The position numbers and the translations under genes are program-made. This document shows positions 8,701 to 57,945 of a stretch of DNA of 64,000 bases, one piece after another. The stretch is from Octopus sinensis (taxonomy: Eukaryota): positions 21,514,001-21,578,000 of the forward strand of contig NC_043016.1 in the NCBI RefSeq assembly GCF_006345805.1. Direction: 5' to 3'. Position 1 is the stretch's first letter, and each line of letters opens with the position of its first letter. The notes under the pieces are model-generated. The model was not told where the DNA came from. It worked only from the letters and a program-made list of their open reading frames with translations, and searched no databases.

Positions 8701-9989
8701 TATATAATAATCTGCTTGTCTATTTACCTTTAGAGAGGTGGAATAAGAATGAGAGAAAGAGGGATAGGGAGGAATGAAGAAAGAAAGGGGGAAGAACTAG
8801 AGAATGGTGATTAATAATAGTCAGCTGAAGGTAGAGGCAAAGAATGAGAGAAAAAGAGGGTGTGAGAAGTGTTAATGACATGTGGTGGGGTGGAGAAGGA
8901 ATACTTATTATGTAGTTAAAAAGTTAGCTGAAGGAAAAGATGGATAGAGAGATGGACAGGGGAGGCAGTTATACTGAGAGAGAAAGAGAGAGAAAAGCAG
9001 ATAACAGTGGTGGTGTGTTGATAGTGTAAAGTATTTCTTGTATTGAACTAATCTTTTTTTTATAGTGACCATCACATACACATAGGTGCAATTATTTATC
9101 TTCTGCTCTCTTAAAAAAATTGATATTTGCTTATCTGAGTTAATTTATCCTAAACTCTGGATTCACAAGAAACACAGTTGCAGCTGTCTAAGAAAGGATG
9201 TGAAAATAGAGAGCACAGATCAGAGAGGAACATTGAAAAGATATAATAAAAAGAGGTAAAAGACAACACCAACAGAGACGTGAGGATTTGAAAGTAAACA
9301 AGTGTCAAGAATATTTGGAGAAAGCTAAACTATGAATGCAGTAAAAATGCAAATCATCCTTTCTCTTTTAAGTAGGTCTTCTTATTGTTGTATTTTGGAA
9401 TGGTCATTTTGCCAGTTTAGCCAATAAAAACACACGCACTATATATTTGGTGTTACTTTGCTTCAGTGTTATTTATTTTTTACATTAATCTTAATCTTAT
9501 TTCATCCCGAGTTCTTTCGTCACACTCCTGTGACCTCATCAGTGGTCCTTTGCTTTCTTCTTTCTTATCTGTGTGTCTCTCCTTACTAACGGTCAGCCAT
9601 TTTATATTTTGCATTTCTATTGTATGTGTTTTCATTTGTGCATGCGTATACCTCTATGTGTGTCTATGTTTAGTTAGTGTGTGTGTGTGGGGGGGGGTCT
9701 TCTTAATATTTTCCATTCCATGGAATTTACAATAGAATAAGTAATAAAAAAATAATGATTTCTTTATTAACCACTAAGGCTTTACAAAATGATTGGGATG
9801 GTACAATGAGAGATTACATGAAAGAGTGTGTAAACAGAAAATAGCTAATAATAAATTTTAACAAAGACTCCTCTAAGAGGGAAATTTCCAAGGGCTACTC
9901 ATGGAAATACTCTGAAACCATTGTTACCTTGACCATTAAGGCAATTGCTTTTTGTATATTGTTTTACTTCAGTCCACAAGTGTATGCTT

Positions 9990-11440: not shown

Positions 11441-11950
11441 TCTACGTTGCAGCAATCCAACTGTAGAAGACAAGACCAAAACCAGCTACTATGAAGACAG
11501 CTACTAAGTGTTGATGGTGACCCTATTGAACGCTTTCAGTTGATACTCCATAAATAACAGGAACGATAATGATGATGACAGCAAGGGTGTATTGATTTGG
11601 AAGAATCAAATGACCATTAGTGTGAAAATCTTGATTAGAGTGTAGTTATGTAGTAGATGAAAGGAAAAGATACTGAAAATAAAACTCAAGGAGATGTAGA
11701 TGCAATGTTGATAAATATCAAGAAAATGACACAGATTAATAATAACTCAGATGATAAATTTGTGATAGAAGCATAATATTCATTCGACTGGAACCTGAGA
11801 AGGGGAATGGCAAAGTGTATACACATAGATGTAAACATATACATCAGTAACTCTTGATCCTAAAAATGGAATGAGAAGGAGGCAGCATTACACAAAATTC
11901 ATTCAAATGAGGGGACATGAAATAAAATTAAATCAAAACTAGTATTAAAT

Positions 11951-12236
11951 TAGAAATATTAATATTTCTAAACCTCTCTAAAGGAGACTACAGCAGCAGT
12001 ACTGGATATTATTAATTATGGTCAGCAGCAACGCCTGTTGGGTTCAGCTACTCCACATTGGTAAGGAGCAACTACCTTGAAACTACTCTGTGGATGCCAG
12101 ACCAGCAAGGGGAAACTGCTGACCTGCCCTGTTCGAAGGTTATATTGGACACAGCTAGAGGCAACGGCCTCTTGGAGCTAATCAATGGCAGCATTTGTCC
12201 TATTTTCCTGGACTGCCATGTTAGCTTGGCGATAAC
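11951..12236 (+). mobile_element. Old diverged monomer of the 362-bp hammerhead (retrozyme-like) repeat, with internal inversion
   Basis: 12021-12236 aligns by eye to the reverse complement of the array unit (GTTCGAAGGTTATAT, GAGCTAAT, TGGCGATAAC). 11951-12019 aligns to the unit end in the opposite orientation (TAGAAATATTAA...CTCTCTAAA.GAGA...CAGC.GCAG). Confidence 0.85.
12052..12094 (+). ncRNA. Decayed type I hammerhead (U3-A8 core) in the old monomer
   Basis: TCCACA-TTGGTAA-GGAGCAACTACCTT-GAAAC-TA-CTC-TGTGGA: perfect 6-bp helix I, but core changes A6G and G16.2C. Confidence 0.7.
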
Positions 12237-12432
12237 TTAATAATATTAAATTCTAGTGTGATTAAGTATTAAATGAACAAATAGCTAAATGGTTAGCTAG
12301 TTGGTAAATAAATTTGCTGAAACTGCTGTGTCAAAATGGTAGAGATTAAAAATAACCACTGTCTATGTGCAACAGAGGATTGAGAAGATGTGCATGCTTG
12401 TGTGTGTATATAGGTTGGTAGTTGCATAAACA

Positions 12433-15692: not shown

Positions 15693-16300
15693 CATCATCA
15701 TCATCATATGTCCATTTTCCATGCTAGCATAGGTTGGATAGTTTGACTGATGTCTGAAAGGACAATAGTTGCACCAGGCTTGCCAACCACTCCAAGAGTG
15801 TAGTGGGTGCTTTTTATGTGCCACCATCACAGGAACCATTCAGGTGGGCTTGACATCGATCATGTTTGGACAGTGCTTTTTACGTGCCACCGGTATGGGA
15901 GCCAGTCAGGGGCCACTGGCATTGGCTACATTTAGATGGTGCTTTTTACATGCCACTGGCATGGGAGCCAGTCAAGCAGCCCTGACATCGATCACATTCA
16001 GATAGTGCTTTTTACATGTCACTGGCACAGGAGTCAGTCAGGGGGCACTGGCATCAACCACATTCAGATGATGCATTTTATGTGCCACCGGAATGGAAGC
16101 CACTCAGGGGTCACTGGCTACAGCTACAATTTTGGTTTTACTTGACTCAACAGGTCTTCTCAAGCATATCATATCGTCTGACGCATCAAGAGTACTTTTG
16201 AATGGTCTGGACATGCAACACTGGTATCGGCCATGGTTGCAATTTCACTTTAGTTGCCAGATCTTCTCAGTCACAGCATATCTCCAAAGGTCTCAGTCTC
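15693..16300 (-). mobile_element. RTE 3' UTR-derived retroposon with five tandem ~65-bp modules
   Basis: (CAT)n tail at 15693; GTGCTTTTTA(C/T)(G/A)TG(C/T)CAC recurs near 15806, 15870, 15938, 16003 and 16070. Confidence 0.85.
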
Positions 16301-28735: not shown

Positions 28736-28835
28736 NNNNNNNNNNNNNNNNNNNNNNNNNNNNNNNNNNNNNNNNNNNNNNNNNNNNNNNNNNNNNNNNN
28801 NNNNNNNNNNNNNNNNNNNNNNNNNNNNNNNNNNN
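28736..28835. other. Assembly gap (100 N)
   Basis: Run of N. Confidence 1.
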
Positions 28836-32619: not shown

Positions 32620-33094
32620 TGAAGAAAAGAAGGGTAAAGAGACCGCTTGCTAAAAATGAAAGCAAAAGCTTAAAACCCTCCACCAATTCTATGATAAATA
32701 CACACATGAGCAATGTAATGAATATTTTAAAAGATAGGCCTACCTTCAGGGTAGAATTTGAAGGTAGTTTACTACATACCCCAATATTAATTGATTTCAT
32801 GCTGGATGTTTAAAGTTAGAAACGCATACTAGTTGACATAGTGAATATTTTAGAAATAGATGTTAAACACTGTTTCCAACTGTGGATTGCAAAGCATGTT
32901 TTCTCATGCATAGCATGAAATCAATTAATATTGGGGTATGTAGTAAACTGCCTTCATATTCCATCCTGAAGGCAGGTTTATTTTTTAAAATATTCATTAC
33001 ATTGCTCGTGTGTGTATTTATTGTAGAATTGGTGGTTTTTTTAAACTTTCACTTTCATTTTTAGCAAGCGGTATCTTTACCCTTCTTTTCTTCA
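32620..33094. mobile_element. MITE/foldback element with ~190-bp inverted arms
   Basis: 32620-~32802 is the reverse complement of ~32912-33094 (roughly 85-90% identical by eye); AT-rich flanks. Confidence 0.85.
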
Positions 33095-34687: not shown

Positions 34688-35383
34688 TGGTTGGACTTAG
34701 TGTCACTTAAAGTCATAGGAAGAATTTATAGTAAGAATTTTGGTAGGAGTGGCTGTCTGTTGTGTGTTTCCCAACGCATGTGTGTAGGGGTATGGTCAGT
34801 AGAAAGGTGTTTCACTGGTAGTTTGAGGTATGTGTGTGTGTGTGTGCAAGTATGTATATGTAGTGTGTGTGTGTATGTGTGCACGTGTGGGTATGTGTGT
34901 ACACATAAGGTTGTGTGTGGGTTGTGTCTGTGGAGTAAATGTATGTTACTCTGTGTGTGTGTGTGTGCGTGTGTGCTTGTATGTGCATGTGTGCACGTAT
35001 GTATGAGTGTGTGTTGTGTATGTATGGGAGGTATGTGTGGTTCATTGTGTGTGTGTGTGTGTGTATATATGTGTGTGAGTGTGTGTGTACATGTGTGTAT
35101 ATGTATGTGTGTGTGTATTTTGTGTGTGAACAAGGGGTTGTGTGGGGAGGTATATGTGCGCTTTTTTGTGCATGTATGCATGTGTGTGTGTGTATGTGTA
35201 TGTGCATGTAGTTGTGTTGCATGTATGTGTGTGTATGCAGGTGTGTATATGTGTATGCATGTGGTTGTGAGTGTTAGGTATGTATGCATTTGTGTGCATG
35301 TGTGTGCACATGTGTGTGTGCGTGTGTATGTATGTGCATCTATATGTGCATGCGTATGTGTATGTGTGTGTGTATGTATATAT

Positions 35384-35455
<72 letters not shown>

Positions 35456-35805
35456 GTGTGAGTGTGTGTGTACATGTGTGTATATGTATGTGTGTGTGTA
35501 TGTGTATGTGCATGTAGTTGTGTTGCATGTATGTGTGTGTATGCAGGTGTGTATATGGTATGCATGTGGTTGTGAGTGTTAGGTATGTATGCATTTGTGT
35601 GCATGTGTGTGCACATGTGTGTGTGCGTGTGTGCTTGTATGTGCATGTGTGCACGTATGTATGAGTGTGTGTTGGAGGTTAAACACCTTTCTACTAGCCA
35701 TTCCCCTATGCACATGTGTATGGAGACACACAACAGACAGCCACTCCTACCAAAATTCTTACTATAAATTTTTCCTACAACCTTTAGTGACACTAAGTCC
35801 AACCA
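34688..35805. repeat. ~128-bp inverted repeats enclosing an ~860-bp GT-rich low-complexity tract
   Basis: 34688-34815 is the reverse complement of 35678-35805; the interior has internal duplications (e.g. ~35270-35330 and ~35570-35630). Confidence 0.85.
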
Positions 35806-40575: not shown

Positions 40576-41782
40576 TTTTGTCAAATCTTGACTAGGTTAT
40601 ATTTTGCTACACAATCTTTATGGAATGTACACCACTAATTACTCCAAATATGACATAGGTAATCTGTATCATCAACAGCCTTTTTGTCCAATGCAAGGGT
40701 CCTCTGTAACTCTCCTCCTCTGCCTAAATAGGTTTTCTCTAGTACTAATGGAAAGTTGTATAAGATATTAATACAACTATTGTTGTATAATAATCAAAAT
40801 TTGGGTGACTGAAATGTCTGAACATCCATCAATTGTGATTTTTCATGAAATATTATTCTATCCTGAATAGCATACAAAAGTTTTGTTCTTTACATTGACA
40901 ATTACTTTTAGAAATGTTTTCTTGTATATCATGAGATGATGACCAAAATTTTCAAAAGGATGGTACATTCAACAAAATAGTCAGAAATAAGCAGTTCGCT
41001 TCTGGCTGTTTGTTCAGCCTCCATTGACTTCTTTTCTGGGAGTAATTGAGAAATGTCAACATTTGATTCAACCACATCATAGCATCTCTTATGCTTGACA
41101 AAAATTTTATTTCATTAGCATGGATTTATTTGTATTTCTAAAAATCATGGAGATGTTTTTTTTATATTAGACCAATGAACACAGCTATATATACCTATAC
41201 CCCTGGAAAAAATACATATGACACTACTAGACATACCACATATCCCATATCACACACCCCATCCCTGCAGGGACACCACAGTAATAATACATACTTTCCC
41301 CACTTCAAGATAACTCTTGCCAACTTCAGATCATACCCAATCAAGTGACATAACTCCTAACCCAATCCCCTGGACCCTTTTCGTTTCACCACTTTTTTCA
41401 CAGCAGCTGCTGACTGATTGTTCTAATCCACCTCTGACAATAGAAAGCAGTTGCCATATTCCCTTCTATATGGGCTGTATGTGATGAGTGTAAAGTTATA
41501 TAATCGGATTGTAACCTAACACTCCATTGTATTCTTTGCGCAAAACCACTTGGTAAGATCAGCCATGATGGATACTTAATATTATAAAATTCAGATAATA
41601 TACCCACTTTACGACAGATATATGAGTGTATCTTCTCCCTGACTTACGGTCTCTTAGACGACTCCTACATACATACATATATATATATAGATATATATAT
41701 ATATATATATATATATATCTATATATAATTATGGTGAATTGAAGAAATGGAGCTGAACGCAGATTGAACAGAAATCGTTTTA

Positions 41783-41872
41783 TTTCATTCTACACGTGTT
41801 TCGAAAGGCACAAATTACCAAAATCCGATTGAATAATGGGACCATATTGTGTCTTTCTCTTCAGGAAGAAAA
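41783..41872 (-). ncRNA. Type I hammerhead ribozyme (left arm)
   Basis: Reverse complement of the motif at 42766-42855. Confidence 0.85.
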
Positions 41873-42765
41873 TAGGAACCGTTGGAAAAACAAAAACAGA
41901 ACAGAGGCGGAGCAAAAACAAATCGAACTATGCTCCTAAGAGCCCATGGCGAAACTGTTTATCAGTGTATGTTGAGAACCGGTGGCTGAAGAATTTAACG
42001 GGTCAGGCATCGGTCAATCATGTGGGTGAGGGTGTGTGGGTGTTCTTTGTGACCGAGAATAAAGTGCAACCTTTGTGTCTCCGAACTCTTCCATATTTTG
42101 TTTGCCAGAGGCCGGATGGCAAACGGGCTTTTACAGTCGGCTTTTCGATGCCCCCATTGGCGGCATTACACTTATCTGGCTTTTAAATAGCGTTTATAAA
42201 TAATACCGGCACCCATAGCCCTTGGTAACAAATCTGAAATAGCCTTTAAGATATCTACGATTAACCACTGCAAGGGGAATTACTCTGTTAGACAAACGGG
42301 GCTTGGTTTTTTCACAGCGGGGGGTTTCCTTGACAAGGCAGGCTTAGATGAACACACACACACATAAAACATAATATATTTTTTTTTCTGCCACCCAACG
42401 GTTCTCGCGGCAGTAGCCACTGACAGCCGAACGATCAAACGCACACACGTACACAAAAAATGTTTTCTACCCCTACGCCAACACACACATATATAGAACA
42501 GTATACACACACGTCTCTAAGTAGATTTTTTCTCGCCCCTTATAAAACATCCAATTCCTTAAATAGTCAGAACTTTATTCTCGGTCACAAAGAACACCCA
42601 CACCCCTCACCCACATGATTGACCGATGCCTGACCCGTTAAATTCTTCAGCCACCGGTTCTCAACATACACTGATAAACAGTTTCGCCATGGGCTCTTAG
42701 GAGCATAGTTCGATTTGTTTTTGCTCCGCCTCTGTTCTGTTTTTGTTTTTCCAACGGATTTCCTA

Positions 42766-42855
42766 TTTTCTTCCTGAAGAGAAAGACACAATATGGTCCC
42801 ATTATTCAATCGGATTTTGGTAATTTGTGCCTTTCGAAACACGTGTAGAATGAAA
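42766..42855 (+). ncRNA. Type I hammerhead ribozyme (right arm)
   Basis: TTTTCTTC-CTGAAGA-GAAAGACACAA...TTGTGCCTTTC-GAAAC-ACGT-GTA|GAATGAAA; palindromic ACACGTGT helix III; predicted cut after 42847. Confidence 0.85.
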
Positions 42856-43062
42856 TAAAACGATTTCTGTTCAATCTGCGTTCAGCTCCATTTCTTCAAT
42901 TCACCAAATATTTTAATTTCAATTATCCGCACCAACGCACGGTTGCAACACCATATGGTTGTACCTCCAACCGTGCTGTTTACTGCTGTGATTTTTGCTA
43001 CTAAGGTATCGGTTAACTTTTGATTAATCTACTACAAGATTATTCATCTTTCTATTTCACAT

Positions 43063-43117
<55 letters not shown>

Positions 43118-43517
43118 TACATACAGATATACTGATAATAGGCCAGTTACTATGGCATTTCTCCTGAGATAACATTTCTTGGATGTACAGTGTTAAAAAC
43201 AACAAATCAGAGGCAGACAAAAATGTGTTCCAGCAGTAGCAGGTATGAAAATACTCAGATTATAAACTATCTTCAAAATATAAATCCAGAAATTCATTTA
43301 GATGTTGGAAAACACAGATCTGGGGTTAAAACCCAGGTGGCAGCCCTGATTGAGATTAGTAACAAAGCAATATGTATATATATTACATAATAGAACAAAA
43401 TAATGAGACCACTTCATCCACTATCATTGCATAATAAACACACACACACACACCACACACACACACACACATATCATTATCATCATCATTTTTCACTTTC
43501 AACTACTGATCATACCT

Positions 43518-43554
<37 letters not shown>

Positions 43555-44040
43555 CTCTCTCTCTCTGTATAAATATCATCATTATTTTTCCTTCATCATC
43601 ATTATTTTAACATCCACCTTGCTTTGTCTGCATGGGTTAGACAGAATTCTTTGTGATAGATTTTTTCTATGACAAGATAGCTTTCCTTTTGCCAACGTTT
43701 ACCTGTTTCCAAGTAATATTCTCTATGGTCAGATGTGTTTTTCATGAAAATGAACAACACTGCTTGTATGACACTGACACTCATTTATAACTATCTTGTG
43801 ATGTCAAAATAAGGTGGCATTAACACACACACACGTCTGCACACGTAAAGAGACATACACAGCATATATATATATATATAATAATAGTTATCGCCATACT
43901 AATATGGCATTCTTATAAAAATAAGAAAAAAGCTGTCCGCTTATTAGCTCCATGAGGCCATCGCCTTAAGTTAGCTATTTGATACACAAACTGTATCCAT
44001 ATAACCTTCGAACAAGGGAGGTCAGTCGCTCCACACTACA

Positions 44041-45888
44041 GCTACAGACGCGTTTCGGGGTATTGCCCCTTTTCAATGCAGCGTAGCCAGCCAGTAGGTG
44101 TCGCTTCCGACAATCTCTGTTCGATGGTTTTATTTACCTAGTTTCGGTGGAATACATCCACTTGTTTTCAATAATAGAAATATTAAAATAACTAAGTCTC
44201 TCTAAAAGAGAACAGCGGCAGCGTTCCCGGAAAATAATAGTTATCGCCATACTAATATGGCATTCTTATAAAAATAAGAAAAAAGCTGTCCGCTTATTAG
44301 CTCCATGAGGCCATCGCCTTAAGTTAGCTATTTGATACACAAACTGTATCCATATAACCTTCGAACAAGGGAGGTCAGTCGCTCCACACTACTTGACCGG
44401 CAGCTACAGACGCGTTTCGGGGTATTGCCCCTTTTCAATGCAGCGTAGCCAGCCGTAGGTGTCGCTTCCGACAATCTCTGTTCGATGGTTTTATTTACCT
44501 AGTTTCGGTGGAATACATCCACTTGTTTTCAATAATAGAAATATTAAAATAACTAAGTCTCTCTAAAAGAGAACAGCGGCAGCATTCCGGAAAATAATAG
44601 TTATCGCCATACTAATATGGCATTCTTATAAAAATAAGAAAAAAGCTGTCCGCTTATTAGCTCCATGAGGCCATCGCCTTAAGTTAGCTATTTGATACAC
44701 AAACTGTATCCATATAACCTTCGAACAAGGGAGGTCAGTCGCTCCACACTACTTGACCGGCAGCTACAGACGCGTTTCGGGGTATTGCCCCTTTTCAATG
44801 CAGCGTAGCCAGCCAGTAGGTGTCGCTTCCGACAATCTCTGTTCGATGGTTTTATTTACCTAGTTTTGGTGGAATACATCCACTTGTTTTCAATAATAGA
44901 AATATTAAAACAACTAAGTCTCTCTAAAAGAGAACAGCGGCAGCGTTCCCGGAAAATAATAGTTATCGCCATACTAATATGGCATTCTTATAAAAATAAG
45001 AAAAAAGCTGTCCGCTTATTAGCTCCATGAGGCCATCGCCTTAAGTTAGCTATTTGATACACAAACTGTATCCATATAACCTTCGAACAAGGGAGGTCAG
45101 TCGCTCCACACTACTTGACCGGCAGCTACAGACGCGTTTCGGGGTATTGCCCCTTTTCAATGCAGCGTAGCCAGCCAGTAGGTGTCGCTTCCGACAATCT
45201 CTGTTCGATGGTTTTATTTACCTAGTTTCGGTGGAATACATCCACTTGTTTTCAATAATAGAAATATTAAAATAACTAAGTCTCTCTAAAAGAGAACAGC
45301 GGCAGCATTCCCGGAAAATAATAGTTATCGCCATACTAATATGGCATTCTTATAAAAATAAGAAAAAAGCTGTCCGCTTATTAGCTCCATGAGGCCATCG
45401 CCTTAAGTTAGCTATTTGATACAGCAACTGTATCCATATAACCTTCGAACAAGGGAGGTCAGTCGCTCCACACTACTTGACCGGCAGCTACAGACGCGTT
45501 TCGGGGTATTGCCCCTTTTCAATGCAGCGTAGCCAGCCAGTAGGTGTCGCTTCCGACAATCTCTGTTCGATGGTTTTATTTACCTAGTTTCGGTGGAATA
45601 CATCCACTTGTTTTCAATAATAGAATATTAAAACAACTAGTCTCTCTAAAAGAGAACAGCGGCAGCGTTCCCGGAAAATAATAGTTATCGCCATACTAAT
45701 ATGGCATTCTTATAAAAATAAGAAAAAAGCTGTCCGCTTATTAGCTCCATGAGGCCATCGCCTTAAGTTAGCTATTTGATACACAAACTGTATCCATATA
45801 ACCTTCGAACAAGGGAGGTCAGTCGCTCCACACTACTTGACCGGCAGCTACAGACGCGTTTCGGGGTATTGCCCCTTTTCAATGCAGC
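44041..45888 (-). ncRNA. Six type I hammerheads, one per unit (44041-44082, 44403-44444, 44763-44804, 45125-45166, 45487-45528, 45847-45888)
   Basis: Minus strand GCTGCA-TTGAAAA-GGGG-CAATA-CCCC-GAAAC-GC-GTC|TGTAGC in every unit. Confidence 0.88.
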
Positions 45889-46152
45889 GTAGCCAGCCAG
45901 TAGGTGTCGCTTCCGACAATCTCTGTTCGATGGTTTTATTTACCTAGTTTCGGTGGAATACATCCACTTGTTTTCAATAATAGAAATATTAAAATAACTA
46001 AGTCTCTCTAAAAGAGAACAGCGGCAGCGTTCCCGGAAAATAATAGTTATAATATTTCTATTATTGAAAACAAGTGGATGTATTCCACCGAAACTAGGTA
46101 AATAAAACCATCGAACAGAGATTGTCGGAAGCGACACCTACTGGCTGGCTAC

Positions 46153-46555
46153 GCTGCATTGAAAAGGGGCAATACCCCGAAACGCGTCTGTAGCTGCCGG
46201 TCAAGTAGTGTGGAGCGACTGACCTTCCTTGTTCGAAGGTTATATGGATACAGTTTGTGTATCAAATAGCTAACTTAAGGCGATGGCCTCATGGAGCTAA
46301 TAGCGGACAGCTTTTTTCTTATTTTTATAAGAATGCCATATTAGTATGGCGATAACTATTATTTTCCGGGAACGCTGCCGCTGTTCTCTTTTAGAGAGAC
46401 TTAGTTATTTTAATATTTCTATTATTGAAAACAAGTGGATGTATTCCACCGAAACTAGGTAAATAAAACCATCGAACAGAGATTGTCGGAAGCGACACCT
46501 ACTGGCTGGCTACGCTGCATTGAAAAGGGGCAATACCCCGAAACGCGTCTGTAGC
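46153..46555 (+). ncRNA. Two type I hammerheads in the inverted arm (46153-46194, 46514-46555)
   Basis: Same motif on the + strand; predicted cuts after 46188 and 46549, 361 nt apart. Confidence 0.88.
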
Positions 46556-46963
46556 TGCCGGTCAAGTAGTGTGGAGCGACTGACCTCCCTTGTTCGAAGG
46601 TTATATGGATACAGTTTGTGTATCAAATAGTTAACTTAAGGCGATGGCCTCATGGAGCTAATAAGCGGACAGCTTTTTTCTTATTTTTATAAGAATGCCA
46701 TATTAGTATGGCGATAACTATTATTTTCCGGAAACGCTGCCGCTGTTCTCTTTTAGAGAGACTTAGTTATTTTAATATTTCTATTATATATATATATATA
46801 TATGTATATATAATTTTCTTAGAAAAACATAAATCCAGAGAAGAAGCATCTTCGTATATATATATAAAGTTAATCCAAACAGGAAAGCACAAAAACACAC
46901 AACTCGAGGACGTGGAACAAATATAGTATTATTGGACACTCAGGAAAGAAGGAAAGAAGGAGG

Positions 46964-46998: not shown

Positions 46999-47085
46999 AT
47001 AGGAGAAGGAAAGATCCAGAGAAAGGAAGACAGAGGGGATGGTTTTTGTTAAGCAGCATTGATTTTTACAATTCTGTAAATAATA

Positions 47086-47443
47086 ATAATAGTATTTTAT
47101 AAGCTAAAAGCTTATAAGAGATCACAACACAATGACTAAAGAAAATAGTGTCATAGTGGGGCATATAAGCCCTTGATGGGAAAAACGTAGGTTTTTCTGT
47201 ACACGTGGGACTCGAACCCACATCTCTTTGTTTTTGCGACAAGTGTGCTAAGCCATTTACACCAACATACAACCATTGGCTAGCATACTTGTCACAAAAA
47301 CAAAGAGGTGTGGGTTTGAGTCCCATGTGTACAGAAAAACCTACTTTTTCTATCAAGGGCTTATATGCCCCATTATTAGACTATTTTGTTTAGTTATTGC
47401 ACAGTGATCGCTTATTAGCTTTAAGCTTATAAAATACTATTAT
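47086..47443. mobile_element. Palindromic element of two head-to-head tRNA-like arms
   Basis: 47086-47255 is the reverse complement of 47277-47443 (21-nt spacer); B-box-like GTGGGTTCGAGTCCCAC on the minus strand of the left arm and GTGGGTTTGAGTCCCAT on the plus strand of the right arm. Confidence 0.85.
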
Positions 47444-47749
47444 ATATATATATATATATATATAAATGTATGTGTATTTTTTCCATGTGTACAAATAACA
47501 CAGAAAAAAAAAAAAAATAGTTACCAGAGTAGCAAAAAATTCACATAAGTACCAAGGATGTTACAGCCTACTTATAAAGATAGAAATTCCAGGGTTTAGT
47601 GAAATGTTTTTGTATAACAGATAAATAAAGAAATGGAGTTAAACGCAGGTGTTATTCAAATCTTTGTACTTCCGAAATATCTTTCGAAGAAAATATTGGT
47701 ATAATAATAGAACATGTAAAAAACTAGAACTAGGAAAGTTTTCTGTTTT

Positions 47750-49989: not shown

Positions 49990-51170
49990 TATAGTTTTTG
50001 TATGTGGCAGATGCTCGGGAGCATTAACCTCCGAAAATCTGCAGAAAACAACTTCCGTCACTTTCCAGGGGGAAAAACTAGAAGTAGTTGATAGCTTCCG
50101 TTATCTAGGTGACCAAGTCAGTAGTGGGGGTGGGTGCACTGAAAGTGTAACTGCTAGAATAAGAATAGCCTGGGCAAAGTTTAGGGAGCTCTTACCTCTG
50201 CTGGTGACTAAAGGCCTCTCACTCAGAGTAAAAGGCAGACTGTATGATGCATGTGTACGAACAGCCATGCTACATGGCAGTGAAACATGGGCCGTGACTG
50301 CTGAGGACATGTGTAAGCTCGTGAGGAATGAAGCCAGTATGCTCCGATGGATGTGTAATGTCAGTGTACATACTCGACAGAGCGTTAGTACCTTGAGAGA
50401 AATGTTGTACCTAAGAAGCATCAGTTGTGGTGTGCAAGAGAGACGATTGCGCTGGTATGGTCATGTGGCGAGAATGGATGAAGATAGGTGTGTGAGAAAG
50501 TGCCAATCCCTAGCAGTTGAGGGAACCCGTGGAAGAGGTAGACCCAGGAAAACCTGGGACGAGGTGGTGAAGCACGACCTTCGAACTTTAGGCCTCACTG
50601 AGGAAATGACCAGCGACCGAGACCTTTGGAAATATGCTGTACGTGAGAAGACCAGGCAGGACAAGTGAGCCCAGCCCACTTATGAATGCCTTTCCTCCCT
50701 TGGACACAAAGACCTGTTGAGACAAGCGAAGTCGAGATAGAACCTCATCCGACAACAGGCACCCATGCCAACCCCCTTTGCTTGCGAAGACATGTTGGGG
50801 CAAGCGAAAGCGAAATCGAATTGAACCAGCCAGGATCCCTGGTCTGGTGGTACGTAAAAAGCACTATCCGACTCGTGGCCGATGCCAGCGCCGCCTCGAC
50901 TGGCTTCCGTGCCGGTGGCACATAAAATACACCAATCCGACCGTGGCCGTTGCCAGCCTCGCCTGTCACCTGTGCAGGTGGCACGTAAAAAACACCCACT
51001 ACACTCACGGAGTGGTTGGCGTTAGGAAGGGCATCCAGCTGTAGAAACATTGCCAGAAAAGACTGGAGCCTGGTGCAGCCTTCTGGCTTCCCAGATCCCT
51101 GGTCGAACCGTCCAACCCATGCTAGCATGGAGAATGGACGTTAAACGATGATGATGATGATGATGATGAT
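49990..51170 (+). mobile_element. Young 5'-truncated RTE LINE (RT C-terminus, 3' UTR, (GAT)n tail)
   Basis: Open frame FVCGRCSG...FRYLGDQVSSGGG...MLHGSETWAV...RRLRWYGHVARM...GRPRKTWDEVV to the stop at 50668; three stem-loop modules in the UTR; truncation point in a (TA)n tract. Confidence 0.95.
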
Positions 51171-55455: not shown

Positions 55456-57945
55456 ATCATCATTTAGCGTCCACTTTCCATGCTAACATGGGTTGGACGG
55501 TTCAACTGGGGTCTGGGAAGCCAGAAGGCTGCACCAGGCCCAGTCTGATCTGACAATGTTTCTATGGCTGGATGCCCTTCCTAACGCCAACCACTCCGTG
55601 AGCGTAGTGGGTGCTTTTTACGTGCCACCTGCTCAGGTGCCAGACGAGGCTGGCAAACAGCCACGGTCGGATGATGCTTTTTATGTGCCACCGGCACGGG
55701 GGTCAGGCGAGGCTGGCAATGGCCATGATCGGATGGTGCCATTTACGTGCCACCGGCACTGGTATCACAGCTACAATTTCCATTGATGTTGATTGATTTC
55801 GATTTTGATTCTGATTCTCATTTGCCTCAACAGGTCTACACAAGTAGAGTTTTGTGTCCCAAGAAGGAAAGGTATGCATAAGTGGACTGGCTACATCCAA
55901 GGTAGAGGCCATGGGTTATGGTCTCACTTGTCCTGCCGGGTATTCTCACGCACAGCATACTTCCATAGGTCTCGGTCTCTAGTCATTTCCTCGGTGAGAC
56001 CTAAAGTTCGAAGGTCGTGCTTCACTACCTCGTCCCAGGTTTTTTGGGTCTACCTATTCCACAGGTTCCCTCAACCACTAGGGTGTGGCACTTTTTCACA
56101 CAACTATCTTCAGCCATTCTCGTCACATGACCATACCAGCGCAAACGTCTCTCTTGCACACCACAACTGATGCTTCTTAGATCCAACTTTTCTCTCAAGG
56201 TACTTACACTCTGTCGAGTATGAACACTAACATTACACATCCATCGGAGCATACTGGCTTCATTTCTTGCAAGCTTACGCATATCCTCAGCAGTCACAGC
56301 CCATGTTTCACTGCCATGTAGCATGGCTGTTCGTACACATGCATCATACAGTCTGCCTTTTACTCTGAACGAGAGGCCTTTTGTCCCCAGTAGGGGTAAG
56401 AGCTCTCTGAACTTTGCCCAGGCTATTCTTACTCTAGCAGTTACACTTTCACCCCCCACCCCCGCTAGTGACTTGGTTACCTAGGTAACGGAAGCTATCA
56501 ACTATTTCTAGTTTTTCTCCCTGGAATGTGGAAGTTATCTCTGCACATTTTCAGTGTTTATTGCTCCTGAGCATCTGCCACATACAAAAACTATTTTCCT
56601 AATTAGCCTTCCTTTGACATTGCTGCACCTTTTATGTGTCCATAGCTTACACTTGGTGCATCTTATAGAGTTTCTACCTACGCCTTTTCTACAGATCGAG
56701 CAGGGCCATCTACCTGAAGGCGTTTGTGATTTGTCTACCTTCCTACTTATTAGGACTTTGGTTTTAGCTAGGTTGACTCTAAGGCCCTTCGATTCTAATC
56801 CTTGCTTCCACACCTGAAACTTCTCCTCTAGTTCTGATAGTGACTCAGCAATTAGAGCAAGGTCATCAGCATAGAGAAGCTCCCAGGGGCAACCTGTCTT
56901 GAATTCCTCCATTATTGCCTGGAGGACTATGATAAATAGGAGGGGGCTGAGGACTGAACCTTGGTGGACCCCAACCTCTACCCGGAATTCTTCACTGTAC
57001 TCGCCAACCTTACTTGCAGCATTCTTGTACATGGCTCGCACAGCTCTCACTAACCATTCATCTTTCCCTAGTTTCCTCATTGACCCCACCAGATAAGGGA
57101 TCGGGGGACCCTGTCGAAGGCTTTCTCCATGTCAACAAAAGCCAGGTACAGGGGCTTATCTTTGGCTAGGTATTTCTCCTGCAGCTGCCTTACCAGGAAT
57201 ATAGCATCAGTGGTACTTTTCCCTGGCACGAACCCAAACTGCATCTCATCTAAACTAACTCTCTCTCTAATTAGTTGGGCTATGACCCTCTCCGTAACCT
57301 TCATTACCTGATCCAACAGCTTGATACCTCTGTAATTATTTGTATCTAGGGCGTCACCTTTACCTTTGTAGCAGTTGACTATTATGCTGCTACACCAGTC
57401 ATTGGGAATGACTCCTTCGTGTATCACCAGGTTAACTATACGGGTGACTAGGCTATAGCCGACACTACCAGATATTTTGAGCATTTCTACAGTAATTCCT
57501 GATGGGCCTGGGGCTTTCCCTGTCTTCATGCTTCTAATTGCCTTAACTACCAAGGAAGTGTCAACTCGGATAGCTGGTCCCTCTGTTGGGTCGACATTCG
57601 GCAGACTCTCTTTATACCATTCATTTTCTTTATTCAGCAACCTTTCATAGAGGCGCAAGTGAACCATCAACCATGCGAACACATTTCTCTCCTACTACAC
57701 CACGATTCTCTCTCACACACTGTCTTGCAACATGAAATACCTCAAGTCTTTCATCCTCACGGCGCAAAACATTGGCAAATTTTTTCTTATCTGCCTCCCC
57801 TCTGGCTAAATACACCTGCTTCCTAGCTTCCCTTCTGGCAGTCTGATACACTTCCCTGCTACCACCGTTCTTCCAGTCCTTCCAAGCCTGTTTCTTTTCT
57901 CTAATAGCCCTGTCAACAATATTGTTCCACCACCACGTTATTTTG
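55456..57945 (-). mobile_element. 5'-truncated RTE LINE, RT domain with PHD-type finger, 3' UTR and tail
   Basis: Overlapping ORFs 57645-57851, 57077-57682, 56535-57089 and 56025-56459: APGPSGI, NYRGIKLL, QFGFVPGKSTTDAIF, FVDMEKAFDRV, QGSVLSPLLF, LYADDLAL; few frameshifts. Confidence 0.95.

What the first reader, a model, noticed from the sequence alone, without database searches (positions are those of the whole stretch)
41732..42906. 1.17-kb foldback element whose two arms each carry an intact, outward-facing hammerhead
Seen: 334-bp near-identical inverted arms around a 506-bp CpG-richer spacer with no convincing ORF. Each arm has CTGAAGA-GAAAG...CTTTC-GAAAC-ACGT-GTA with palindromic helix III ACACGTGT. 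The geometry (divergent arms, AT-rich flanks) matches the array 1 kb downstream, but the sequence is unrelated. Inference: a second, non-autonomous ribozyme-bearing PLE derivative or an inverted-pLTR insertion. It looks like a MITE but lacks an evident target-site duplication.
Basis: partly seen in the sequence, partly recalled or inferred. Interest (0 to 1): 0.7.

Follow-up and report, generated by a model that had tools for sequence, protein, structure and literature searches.

The report
Head-to-head hammerhead retroelement insertion
A young 1.2-kb inverted-repeat insertion in an invertebrate-like animal genome carries a complete hammerhead self-cleaving RNA motif in each arm and is best read as a truncated, head-to-head double copy left by a Penelope-like retrotransposon, which is a known kind of event.

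Summary
Arms 41732-42065 and 42572-42906 (334/335 nt) show no substitutions and two small indels, around a unique 506-nt spacer. Each arm carries, facing outward, a type-I hammerhead with every canonical core base. Helix I has 9 of 10 bp. Helix II is long, with a G10.1-C11.1 pair. Helix III is the palindrome ACACGUGU, and cleavage falls after A42847 (mirror: A41791). A motif this good is expected about 0.001 times per 64 kb. Rfam does not call it, probably because helix II carries a 45-nt insert.

One correction: the spacer is not CpG-richer than the arms (observed/expected 0.93 vs 0.95). The whole insertion stands out from CpG-depleted host DNA (0.34), so it is young or unmethylated.

No ORF, no Pfam domain, no target-site duplication and no other copy turned up in the window or the public collections I could search. 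The left end abuts a (TA)n tract. The unrelated 362-bp array 1 kb downstream has the same head-to-head geometry with (TA)n at both ends.

This matches published Penelope-like element (PLE) insertion behaviour. Best reading: a dead, 5'-truncated head-to-head double cDNA insertion of a hammerhead-bearing, probably non-autonomous PLE-mobilised element. It is a new member of a known kind, of modest interest. Membership is unproven without genome-wide copies.

The parts
41676..41731 (.). (TA)n microsatellite directly abutting the left end; presumed insertion target
   Evidence: Sequence. Perfect (TA)>=5 tracts cover only 3% of the window.
41732..42065 (-). Left arm (334 nt). Its sense strand is the minus strand, and its 3' terminus is at 41732.
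   Evidence: Inverted repeat with 0 substitutions and 2 indels against the right arm. CpG o/e 0.95.
41781..41874 (-). Hammerhead motif of the left arm. CUGAAGA is at 41864-41858. The predicted cleavage is after A41791 (between 41791 and 41790).
   Evidence: Exact mirror of the right-arm motif.
42066..42571 (.). Unique 506-nt spacer. It is probably the extra 5' portion of the longer of the two cDNA copies. It is non-coding and its second half is (CA)n-like.
   Evidence: No repeat within the window, no Pfam hit in any frame, CpG o/e 0.93.
42572..42906 (+). Right arm (335 nt). Its sense strand is the plus strand, and its 3' terminus is at 42906.
   Evidence: CpG o/e 0.96.
42764..42857 (+). Type-I hammerhead motif. 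Helix I: 42764-42773 / 42848-42857 (9 of 10 bp). CUGAAGA: 42774-42780. Helix II: 42781-42791 / 42825-42835 (5+5 bp with an A.C mismatch and G10.1-C11.1) around a structured insert. GAA: 42836-42838. Helix III: 42839-42846, ACACGUGU. A17 = 42847, with cleavage between 42847 and 42848.
   Evidence: Sequence, pattern, descriptor and chance rate. The hammerhead fold is -14.8 kcal/mol against an MFE of -16.3. The dimer forms an 8-bp intermolecular helix III (-44.9 vs -32.6 kcal/mol).
42907..43061 (+). 155-bp segment between the right arm and the next (TA)n tract. It may belong to the insertion (tail or 3' extension) or may be host DNA. It contains a very stable long hairpin (42903-43013).
   Evidence: CpG o/e 1.09, and the CpG-dense block runs to 43010. 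Fold -36.1 kcal/mol, z = -4.7. Unique in the window. Ambiguous, because a small CpG cluster also lies left of the left (TA)n tract.

Best explanation
The locus is a dead-on-arrival insertion made by the reverse transcriptase/endonuclease machinery of a Penelope-like element (PLE). It holds two 5'-truncated cDNA copies of the 3' end of one hammerhead-bearing, probably non-autonomous, retroelement RNA, joined head to head at the edge of a (TA)n microsatellite. One copy is about 335 nt and the other about 841 nt (arm plus spacer). Their shared 3'-terminal 334 nt form the inverted arms, and the 3' ends point outward. The second arm arose either by priming from both nicked target strands or by snap-back self-priming of the first cDNA; these two routes cannot be told apart here. 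The hammerhead is a passenger from the parent's terminal (pLTR-like) region. In tandem sense copies it would act as a dimer through its palindromic helix III to cut multimeric transcripts. At this locus the two ribozymes lie on opposite strands, so no single transcript carries two sense copies. A read-through transcript would instead fold into a 334-bp hairpin. In-cis ribozyme activity here is therefore probably weak or absent. Shown: the anatomy, the motif and its improbability by chance, the lack of coding capacity and TSD, the (TA)n abutment, and the CpG-undepleted (young or unmethylated) state. Inferred: the PLE machinery, the cDNA origin, and the dimer requirement.
For: Arms identical apart from two indels, both ending at the same nucleotide 59 nt past the predicted cleavage site. 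Complete hammerhead core with G10.1-C11.1, a long helix II and a 2-bp helix III capped by a palindromic tetraloop. These traits are described for metazoan type-I and PLE hammerheads that work as dimers (PMC4209133; PMC7229834). Chance expectation is about 0.001 per 64 kb. The dimer fold forms the 8-bp helix III. The GUA cleavage triplet occurs in some natural hammerheads (PMC1636495 abstract). PLE insertions are described as 5'-truncated, often with an adjacent inverted 5'-truncated copy forming inverted repeats, biased to microsatellites including (TA)n, often without a discernible TSD, and with the hammerhead near the 3' end (PMC8557442). The left end abuts (TA)n, and such tracts cover 3% of the window. 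The unrelated array 43880-46787 shows the same head-to-head geometry (junction at 46046|46047, 52-nt offset) with (TA)n at both ends. The element holds 47 CpGs against about 13 expected at the host rate, which indicates a recent insertion. Animal retrozymes have been linked to PLE pLTRs (bioRxiv 10.64898/2026.07.22.740005).
Against: There is no RT or GIY-YIG remnant in the element and no GIY-YIG-like motif in the window (a weak regex test). No direct (pLTR-type) repeat is present. No other copy or autonomous partner could be retrieved, so recurrence, 5'-truncation heterogeneity and core conservation are all untested. No Rfam hammerhead model matches, even at E<=10. The hammerhead fold is not the monomer MFE. 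The (TA)n bias is documented mainly for Naiad PLEs, which lack canonical hammerheads. The right end does not abut (TA)n directly.
Confidence: 0.6

Rival explanations
1. A single hammerhead-bearing retroelement fragment was inserted once. The inverted duplicate arose later or artificially, through a replication template-switch or palindrome-forming rearrangement, or through a mis-assembly of long reads.
For: The arms differ only by indels and have no substitutions, a pattern typical of consensus errors or a very recent duplication. The scaffold contains an N gap at 28736-28835. PLE-type tandem/inverted structures are known to trouble assemblies (PMC8557442).
Against: A 506-nt unique spacer separates the arms, unlike a missed-adapter palindrome. 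A second, unrelated element 1 kb away has the same geometry with its own 52-nt offset. The two indels show that the arms were assembled as distinct sequences.
Confidence: 0.15
2. It is a DNA-transposon derivative (a MITE or foldback element with long terminal inverted repeats) that carries a hammerhead-like sequence by chance or by capture.
For: It has long, perfect terminal inverted repeats, is short and non-coding, and sits in AT-rich flanks. The window contains other MITE-like inverted repeats, for example 32680-32803/32912-33035.
Against: No TSD of any usual length (TA, TTA/TAA, TTAA, 8 bp) is present. The arms lack the internal subrepeats typical of Foldback elements. The hammerhead is improbable by chance, and its position and orientation near an outward 3' end match retroelement biology. 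The other inverted repeats in the window are 80-91% identical, not 100%.
Confidence: 0.12
3. The hammerhead motif is a chance match or a decayed relic with no ribozyme ancestry that matters, and the element is an anonymous inverted repeat.
For: No Rfam hit at any threshold. Helix II carries a 45-nt insert. The hammerhead fold lies 1.5 kcal/mol above the MFE, and the local fold z-score is only -1.2. A genome of gigabase size would hold tens of chance hits at this descriptor quality (extrapolated).
Against: All 11 core positions plus G10.1-C11.1, a 9/10-bp helix I and an 8-nt palindromic helix III occur together. The loose descriptor plus a palindrome occurs 0.0004 times per 64 kb. The motif also coincides with a PLE-like insertion geometry, which is independent of the motif.
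Confidence: 0.08

Closest known systems
Penelope-like element (PLE) insertions with an inverted 5'-truncated copy and a hammerhead in the terminal (pLTR) region (Penelope/Poseidon, Neptune, Nematis; PMC8557442, PMC4209133)
   Same: Head-to-head inverted copies with the 3' ends outward, a type-I hammerhead near the 3' end, a long helix II and a short palindromic helix III, insertion at a microsatellite, and no clear TSD.
   Different: There is no RT/GIY-YIG ORF or remnant, no direct pLTR, and no demonstrated homology to any autonomous PLE. [quoted passage not shown]
Metazoan non-LTR retrozymes (tandem 170-400-bp repeats with type-I hammerheads, expressed as circRNAs; PMC7229834; bioRxiv 10.64898/2026.07.22.740005)
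   Same: Non-coding, a type-I hammerhead with a weak palindromic helix III that implies dimer activity, low GC, and a probable PLE-dependent origin. 'Solo' monomer copies are known.
   Different: The copies are inverted and not head-to-tail. The longer copy (841 nt or more) contains no internal direct repeat, so the parent unit is longer than typical retrozymes. A circular RNA cannot be excised from this locus, because only one sense ribozyme lies on each strand.
L1 twin-priming inversions / snap-back cDNA hairpins (from general knowledge, not tested here)
   Same: An inverted arrangement produced during target-primed reverse transcription.
   Different: Twin priming gives adjacent, non-overlapping inverted and direct segments. 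Here the same 334 nt are present twice.
MITEs / Foldback DNA transposons
   Same: Short, non-coding, with long terminal inverted repeats.
   Different: No TSD, no subrepeat structure in the arms, and a ribozyme motif oriented as in retroelements.

Membership tests
Hammerhead ribozyme, type I | Conserved core C3-U4-G5-A6-N7-G8-A9 ... G12-A13-A14 ... A15.1-U16.1, H17 | tested here: met
   CUGAAGA at 42774-42780, GAA at 42836-42838, A42839/U42846, A17 = 42847. Identical in the left arm.
Hammerhead ribozyme, type I | Three helices around the core, helix I open, G10.1-C11.1 closing helix II | tested here: met
   Helix I 9/10 bp. Helix II 5+5 bp with G42781-C42835. Helix III 2 bp plus tetraloop as a monomer, or 8 bp as a dimer.
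Hammerhead ribozyme, type I | Match to the curated covariance models (Rfam hammerhead families) | tested here: not met
   No hammerhead hit at gathering score or at E<=10 with relaxed filters. The 45-nt insert in helix II is the likely cause, but that could not be tested.
Hammerhead ribozyme, type I | Conservation and covariation of the helices among homologues | not testable with these tools
   No homologous copy was found in the window or the public collections.
Hammerhead ribozyme, type I | Site-specific self-cleavage | not testable with these tools
   Needs in-vitro transcription of monomer and tandem-dimer constructs.
Penelope-like element (autonomous) | ORF encoding a telomerase-like RT and a GIY-YIG endonuclease | tested here: not met
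   No Pfam hit at E<=10 in any sense frame of either possible long copy or in the element's ORFs. No GIY-YIG-like motif in the window.
PLE-type insertion / non-autonomous PLE derivative | 5'-truncated copies in tandem and/or inverted arrangement (inverted copy adjacent, 3' ends outward) | tested here: met
   Head-to-head arms with an unequal inner extent (the 506-nt spacer). Definition from PMC8557442. Truncation is inferred, because the full-length parent is unknown.
PLE-type insertion / non-autonomous PLE derivative | Direct pseudo-LTR (partial tandem) | tested here: not met
   No direct repeat within 41732-43061 apart from low-complexity sequence.
PLE-type insertion / non-autonomous PLE derivative | Microsatellite target, TSD often not discernible | tested here: met
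   The left end abuts (TA)n 41676-41731. No TSD. Only one of the two ends abuts (TA)n directly.
PLE-type insertion / non-autonomous PLE derivative | Sequence homology of the terminus to an autonomous PLE of the same genome | not testable with these tools
   The host genome is not available. The best RT hit to a window LINE is only 63% identical, so the species is absent from the protein collection.
Metazoan non-LTR retrozyme | Head-to-tail tandem repeats of about 170-400 bp, each with a type-I hammerhead | tested here: not met
   The copies are inverted, and there is no internal direct repeat in 841 nt.
MITE / Foldback DNA transposon | Terminal inverted repeats flanked by a target-site duplication of fixed length | tested here: not met
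   Inverted repeats are present, but no TSD of 2-12 bp lies at or within 3 bp of the ends, apart from trivial 2-3-nt AT matches.

The most novel reading that the evidence does not exclude
The foldback is not an insertion accident but a recurrent unit: a non-autonomous 'foldback retrozyme'. Its CpG-rich spacer would drive divergent transcription, and the two outward transcripts would carry identical sense hammerheads that dimerise in trans through the ACACGUGU palindrome to define their 3' ends. The hammerhead itself, with a roughly 45-nt structured helix II extension that Rfam cannot see, would be a distinct structural variant.
Probability: 0.07. Interest if true: 0.6.

Novelty: new member of a known kind. 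Interest (0 to 1): 0.3.

Why it matters
If correct, this is one more example of hammerhead-bearing, PLE-mobilised non-coding DNA in an invertebrate-like genome. It is caught young: the arms are identical and the CpGs are undecayed. That suggests the family and its autonomous partner may still be active in this species. It also shows that curated covariance models miss hammerheads with large helix II inserts. Two unrelated elements 1 kb apart share the head-to-head, (TA)n-targeted geometry, which gives a useful natural pair for studying how PLE-type integration produces inverted copies. In practice, such 334-bp perfect palindromes can produce double-stranded RNA and can cause assembly errors. 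None of this overturns current understanding.

Tried and rejected
(1) Rfam at gathering score across the whole window and at E<=10 on 41400-46400 gave no hammerhead. The only hits were a tRNA-like element and spurious miRNA-family hits on (TA)n tracts and on the array palindrome.
(2) A protein search with the 116-aa arm-to-spacer ORF, meant to pull other copies out of gene-call collections, found nothing.
(3) Exact-pattern scans found nothing. These were the full hammerhead signature in metagenome and viral contigs and a 23-mer across the 3' half of the motif in metagenomes.
(4) Pfam on the element's ORFs and on stop-masked three-frame translations of both possible long copies found nothing.
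(5) A GIY-YIG regex over the six-frame window translation gave no credible hit.
(6) I tried to identify the host through a window LINE RT. There were 2397 hits, the best 63% identical and unnamed. Cluster and contig look-ups gave no organism.
(7) BLAST of the arms, spacer and flanks against the window found no other copy and no paralogous empty site.
(8) I considered that the 362-bp array carries a hammerhead. It has GAAA-CGCG-UC, a GGGG/CCCC helix II and a 7-bp helix I, but no CUGANGA box on either strand, nor does its 68%-identical relative at about 12 kb. I rejected it as a canonical hammerhead.
(9) I considered using CpG density to fix the element's right boundary at 43061. This was inconclusive, because a CpG cluster also lies left of the left (TA)n tract.

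Full report

Yes. The window holds an inverted repeat with arms at 41732-42065 and 42572-42906. The repeat finder reports it as three gap-free blocks that are 97-100% complementary. A global alignment shows 334 vs 335 nt with no substitutions and two indels, one of 2 nt and one of 1 nt. The 506-nt spacer (42066-42571) and the arms have no other copy in the 64-kb window.

The string CTGAAGAGAAAG-N-CTTTCGAAACACGTGTA occurs exactly twice, at 42774-42847 (+) and 41864-41791 (-). None is expected in shuffled sequence. Each copy faces the outer end of its arm.

**2. Is it a hammerhead?**

Read on the plus strand of the right arm, the motif has every canonical feature of a type-I hammerhead:

| Feature | Coordinates | Detail |
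|---|---|---|
| Helix I | 42764-42773 / 42848-42857 | 9 of 10 bp, open-ended |
| 5' core box | 42774-42780 | CUGAAGA |
| Helix II | 42781-42791 / 42825-42835 | GAAAG.CACAA / UUGUG.CUUUC; G10.1-C11.1 pair; one A.C mismatch; encloses a further structured insert |
| 3' core | 42836-42838 | GAA |
| Helix III | 42839-42846 | ACACGUGU |
| Cleavage site | A17 = 42847 | GUA triplet; cleavage between 42847 and 42848 |

- **Helix III.** As a monomer it is only 2 bp capped by the palindromic tetraloop ACGU. As a dimer it becomes an 8-bp intermolecular helix.
- **Thermodynamics.** ViennaRNA puts the enforced hammerhead fold at -14.8 kcal/mol against an MFE of -16.3. Helix II is already present in the MFE. 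A two-copy cofold forms the 8-bp helix III at -44.9 kcal/mol, against -32.6 for two monomers.
- **Chance rate.** I wrote a descriptor loose enough to admit this candidate. It requires CUGANGA, a helix II of at least 4 bp with a loop up to about 60 nt, GAAA, a helix III of at least 2 bp, H17, and a helix I with at least 5 of 9 bp. In the real window it finds both arms plus one marginal hit at 2762.

| Descriptor | Hits per 64 kb, both strands (523 Mb first-order Markov sequence) |
|---|---|
| Loose | 0.037 |
| Observed helix quality | 0.0011 |
| Loose plus a palindromic helix III | 0.0004 |

Dinucleotide shuffles agree: 0.05 for the loose descriptor and 0 of 63 at the observed quality.

- **Evidence against.** No Rfam hammerhead family matches, either at gathering score or at E<=10 with relaxed filters. 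The 45-nt insert in helix II is the probable reason, but I could not test an edited sequence. No homologues exist to test covariation.
- **Fit to the literature.** The motif's traits are a G10.1-C11.1 pair, a larger than usual helix II, and a 1-2-bp helix III capped by a small palindromic loop, which implies activity as a dimer. These match what Cervera and de la Pena describe for metazoan type-I and PLE hammerheads (PMC4209133; also PMC7229834). GUA is a minority but natural cleavage triplet (PMC1636495 abstract).

**3. What surrounds it?**

- **Host type.** The window looks like an animal genome. It is 36% GC and has many (TA)n, (TG)n and (TATG)n tracts. It also has LINE RT fragments (Pfam RVT_1) and one scaffold gap.
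- **CpG content.** The host DNA is strongly CpG-depleted:

| Region | CpG observed/expected |
|---|---|
| Whole window | 0.34 |
| Immediate flanks | 0.24 and 0.14 |
| Left / right arm | 0.95 / 0.96 |
| Spacer | 0.93 |
| 362-bp array unit | 1.09 |

The whole insertion is undepleted: it has 47 CpGs where about 13 are expected at the host rate. That points to a recent insertion or an unmethylated state.

- **Ends and TSD.** The left end abuts a 56-bp (TA)n tract. Perfect (TA)>=5 tracts cover only 3% of the window. The right end abuts AT-rich sequence, and the next (TA)n tract starts 155 bp further on, at 43062. No target-site duplication of 2-12 bp exists at or near the ends.
- **The 155 bp at 42907-43061.** This segment is also CpG-undepleted, and the CpG-dense block ends at 43010. 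It folds into a very stable hairpin (-36.1 kcal/mol, z = -4.7). It may belong to the insertion. However, a CpG cluster also lies left of the left (TA)n tract, so I leave its status open.

**4. Coding capacity and relatives**

- The longest ORF (116 aa, running from the arm into the spacer) has no homologue among 5.8 billion proteins.
- No ORF, and no stop-masked frame of either possible 'long copy', hits Pfam at E<=10.
- No GIY-YIG-like motif occurs in the six-frame translation of the window.
- Exact-pattern scans of metagenome and viral contigs found nothing.
- The host species is evidently absent from the searchable collections. The best hit to a window LINE RT is 63% identical and unnamed.
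- Recurrence, truncation heterogeneity and core conservation therefore could not be tested.

**5. The neighbouring array**

The 362-bp array runs from 43880 to 46046 in one orientation, then flips at 46046|46047 and continues as 2.05 inverted units to 46787. There is a 52-nt offset between the palindrome arms.

Both outer ends abut (TA)n and end in ...CTATTAT. This suggests priming on the (TA)n target by microhomology, which is an inference.

Its sense strand, as defined by a hammerhead-like segment, also points outward on both sides. So the head-to-head, (TA)n-targeted geometry occurs in two unrelated elements 1 kb apart. However, the array's segment (GGCUACG-CUGCAUUGAAAA-GGGG-CAAUA-CCCC-GAAA-CGCG-UC-UGUAGCU) lacks the CUGANGA box. 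So does its 68%-identical relative near 12 kb. It is not a canonical hammerhead.

**6. Mechanism**

Craig et al. (PMC8557442) describe PLE insertions as follows:
- They are heavily 5'-truncated.
- They are often partial tandems.
- They are biased to microsatellites, including (TA)n.
- They frequently lack a discernible TSD.
- In canonical clades they carry hammerheads near the 3' end, within the pseudo-LTR.

The foldback fits this template. It looks like two cDNA copies of one RNA's 3' end, one about 335 nt and the other about 841 nt, joined head to head with the 3' ends outward. Both copies end at the same nucleotide, 59 nt past the ribozyme's cleavage site. The shared 334 nt form the arms, and the 'spacer' is the extra 5' part of the longer copy.

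Two routes would give this product, and I cannot separate them: priming from both nicked target strands, or snap-back self-priming of the first cDNA.

The last 841 nt are non-coding, so the parent is probably non-autonomous or has a long non-coding terminus. It is not a typical short retrozyme, because 841 nt contain no internal direct repeat.

At this locus the two ribozymes are on opposite strands. No transcript can carry two sense copies, and a read-through RNA would form a 334-bp hairpin. The ribozymes are therefore best seen as passengers that are intact in sequence but probably idle here.

**7. Rivals**

| Rival | Confidence | Comment |
|---|---|---|
| Post-insertion or assembly-derived inverted duplication of a single retroelement fragment | 0.15 | Supported by the indel-only differences; opposed by the 506-nt spacer and the second element with the same geometry |
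| MITE / Foldback DNA transposon | 0.12 | No TSD, no subrepeats, retroelement-like ribozyme placement; other inverted repeats in the window are 80-91% identical |
| Chance or relic motif | 0.08 | Opposed by the chance rates above and by the independent PLE-like geometry |

**8. Comparison with known systems, and novelty**

The element works like a PLE-type hammerhead-bearing insertion. Membership in PLEs proper fails on the ORF criterion, and homology to an autonomous partner is untestable here. Membership in non-LTR retrozymes fails on the tandem criterion.

I rate it a new member of a known kind. The modest points of interest are:
- a hammerhead variant with a large helix II insert that Rfam misses;
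- the youth of the insertion;
- the paired example of head-to-head integration.

Interest: 0.3.

Noticed in passing
window 43880-46787: A 362-bp tandem array has six units in one orientation, then 2.05 inverted units after a junction at 46046|46047. (TA)n lies at both ends, and both outer ends finish in ...CTATTAT. CpG o/e is 1.09. On its outward-facing strand it has a hammerhead-like segment: a 7-bp helix I, a GGGG/CCCC helix II, and GAAA-CGCG-UC. The 5' box reads CUGCAUUGAAAA instead of CUGANGA, so it is not a canonical hammerhead.
   Followed up: partly
window 11900-12300: A diverged (about 68% identical) single copy of the 362-bp array unit. It also lacks CUGANGA. Its helix II pairing is kept, but in a register shifted by 2 nt (AAGG/CCUU).
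   Followed up: partly
window 42903-43013: An unusually stable long hairpin (-36.1 kcal/mol, z = -4.7) lies immediately right of the foldback, with the core GCACGGTTG...CAACCGTGC. It is CpG-undepleted. It could be part of the insertion, a small palindromic element, or a hairpin RNA precursor.
   Followed up: partly
window 9515-9542 (-): CUGAUGA-G-GUCAC-AGGAGU-GUGAC-GAAA. [quoted passage not shown] It has no convincing helix I or palindromic helix III. It may be a decayed PLE ribozyme or a chance match.
   Followed up: partly
window 47057-47472: A tRNA-like sequence (47197-47271, minus strand, Rfam tRNA 36.3 bits) sits between 128-nt inverted arms that are 80% complementary (47057-47184 / 47345-47472). 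It may be a tRNA-derived SINE or MITE.
   Followed up: no
window 32680-33035 and 34688-35805: Two other foldback-type inverted repeats: 124-nt arms at 91% with a 108-nt spacer, and 128-nt arms at 88% with an 862-nt spacer rich in (TG)n. They are older and MITE-like, and neither has a hammerhead motif.
   Followed up: no
window 50140-51066 and 55540-56451: Two copies of the same LINE family lie in inverted orientation at 91% identity (RVT_1 plus PHD finger, and a conserved C-terminal region). The best outside protein match is only 63% identical.
   Followed up: partly
window 15851-16118, 50846-50996, 55610-55759: 63-66-bp tandem subrepeats (GGTGCTTTTTACGTGCCACCGGCA...) recur at several places, some of them next to the LINE copies. 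They are probably part of a SINE or LINE tail family.
   Followed up: no
window 28736-28835: A run of 100 N, which is a scaffold gap.
   Followed up: no
window 45894-46147: Sub-threshold Rfam 'MIR6217' hits on both strands (103 and 88 bits, gathering score 110). These only reflect the palindromic junction of the array and are not a microRNA gene.
   Followed up: yes
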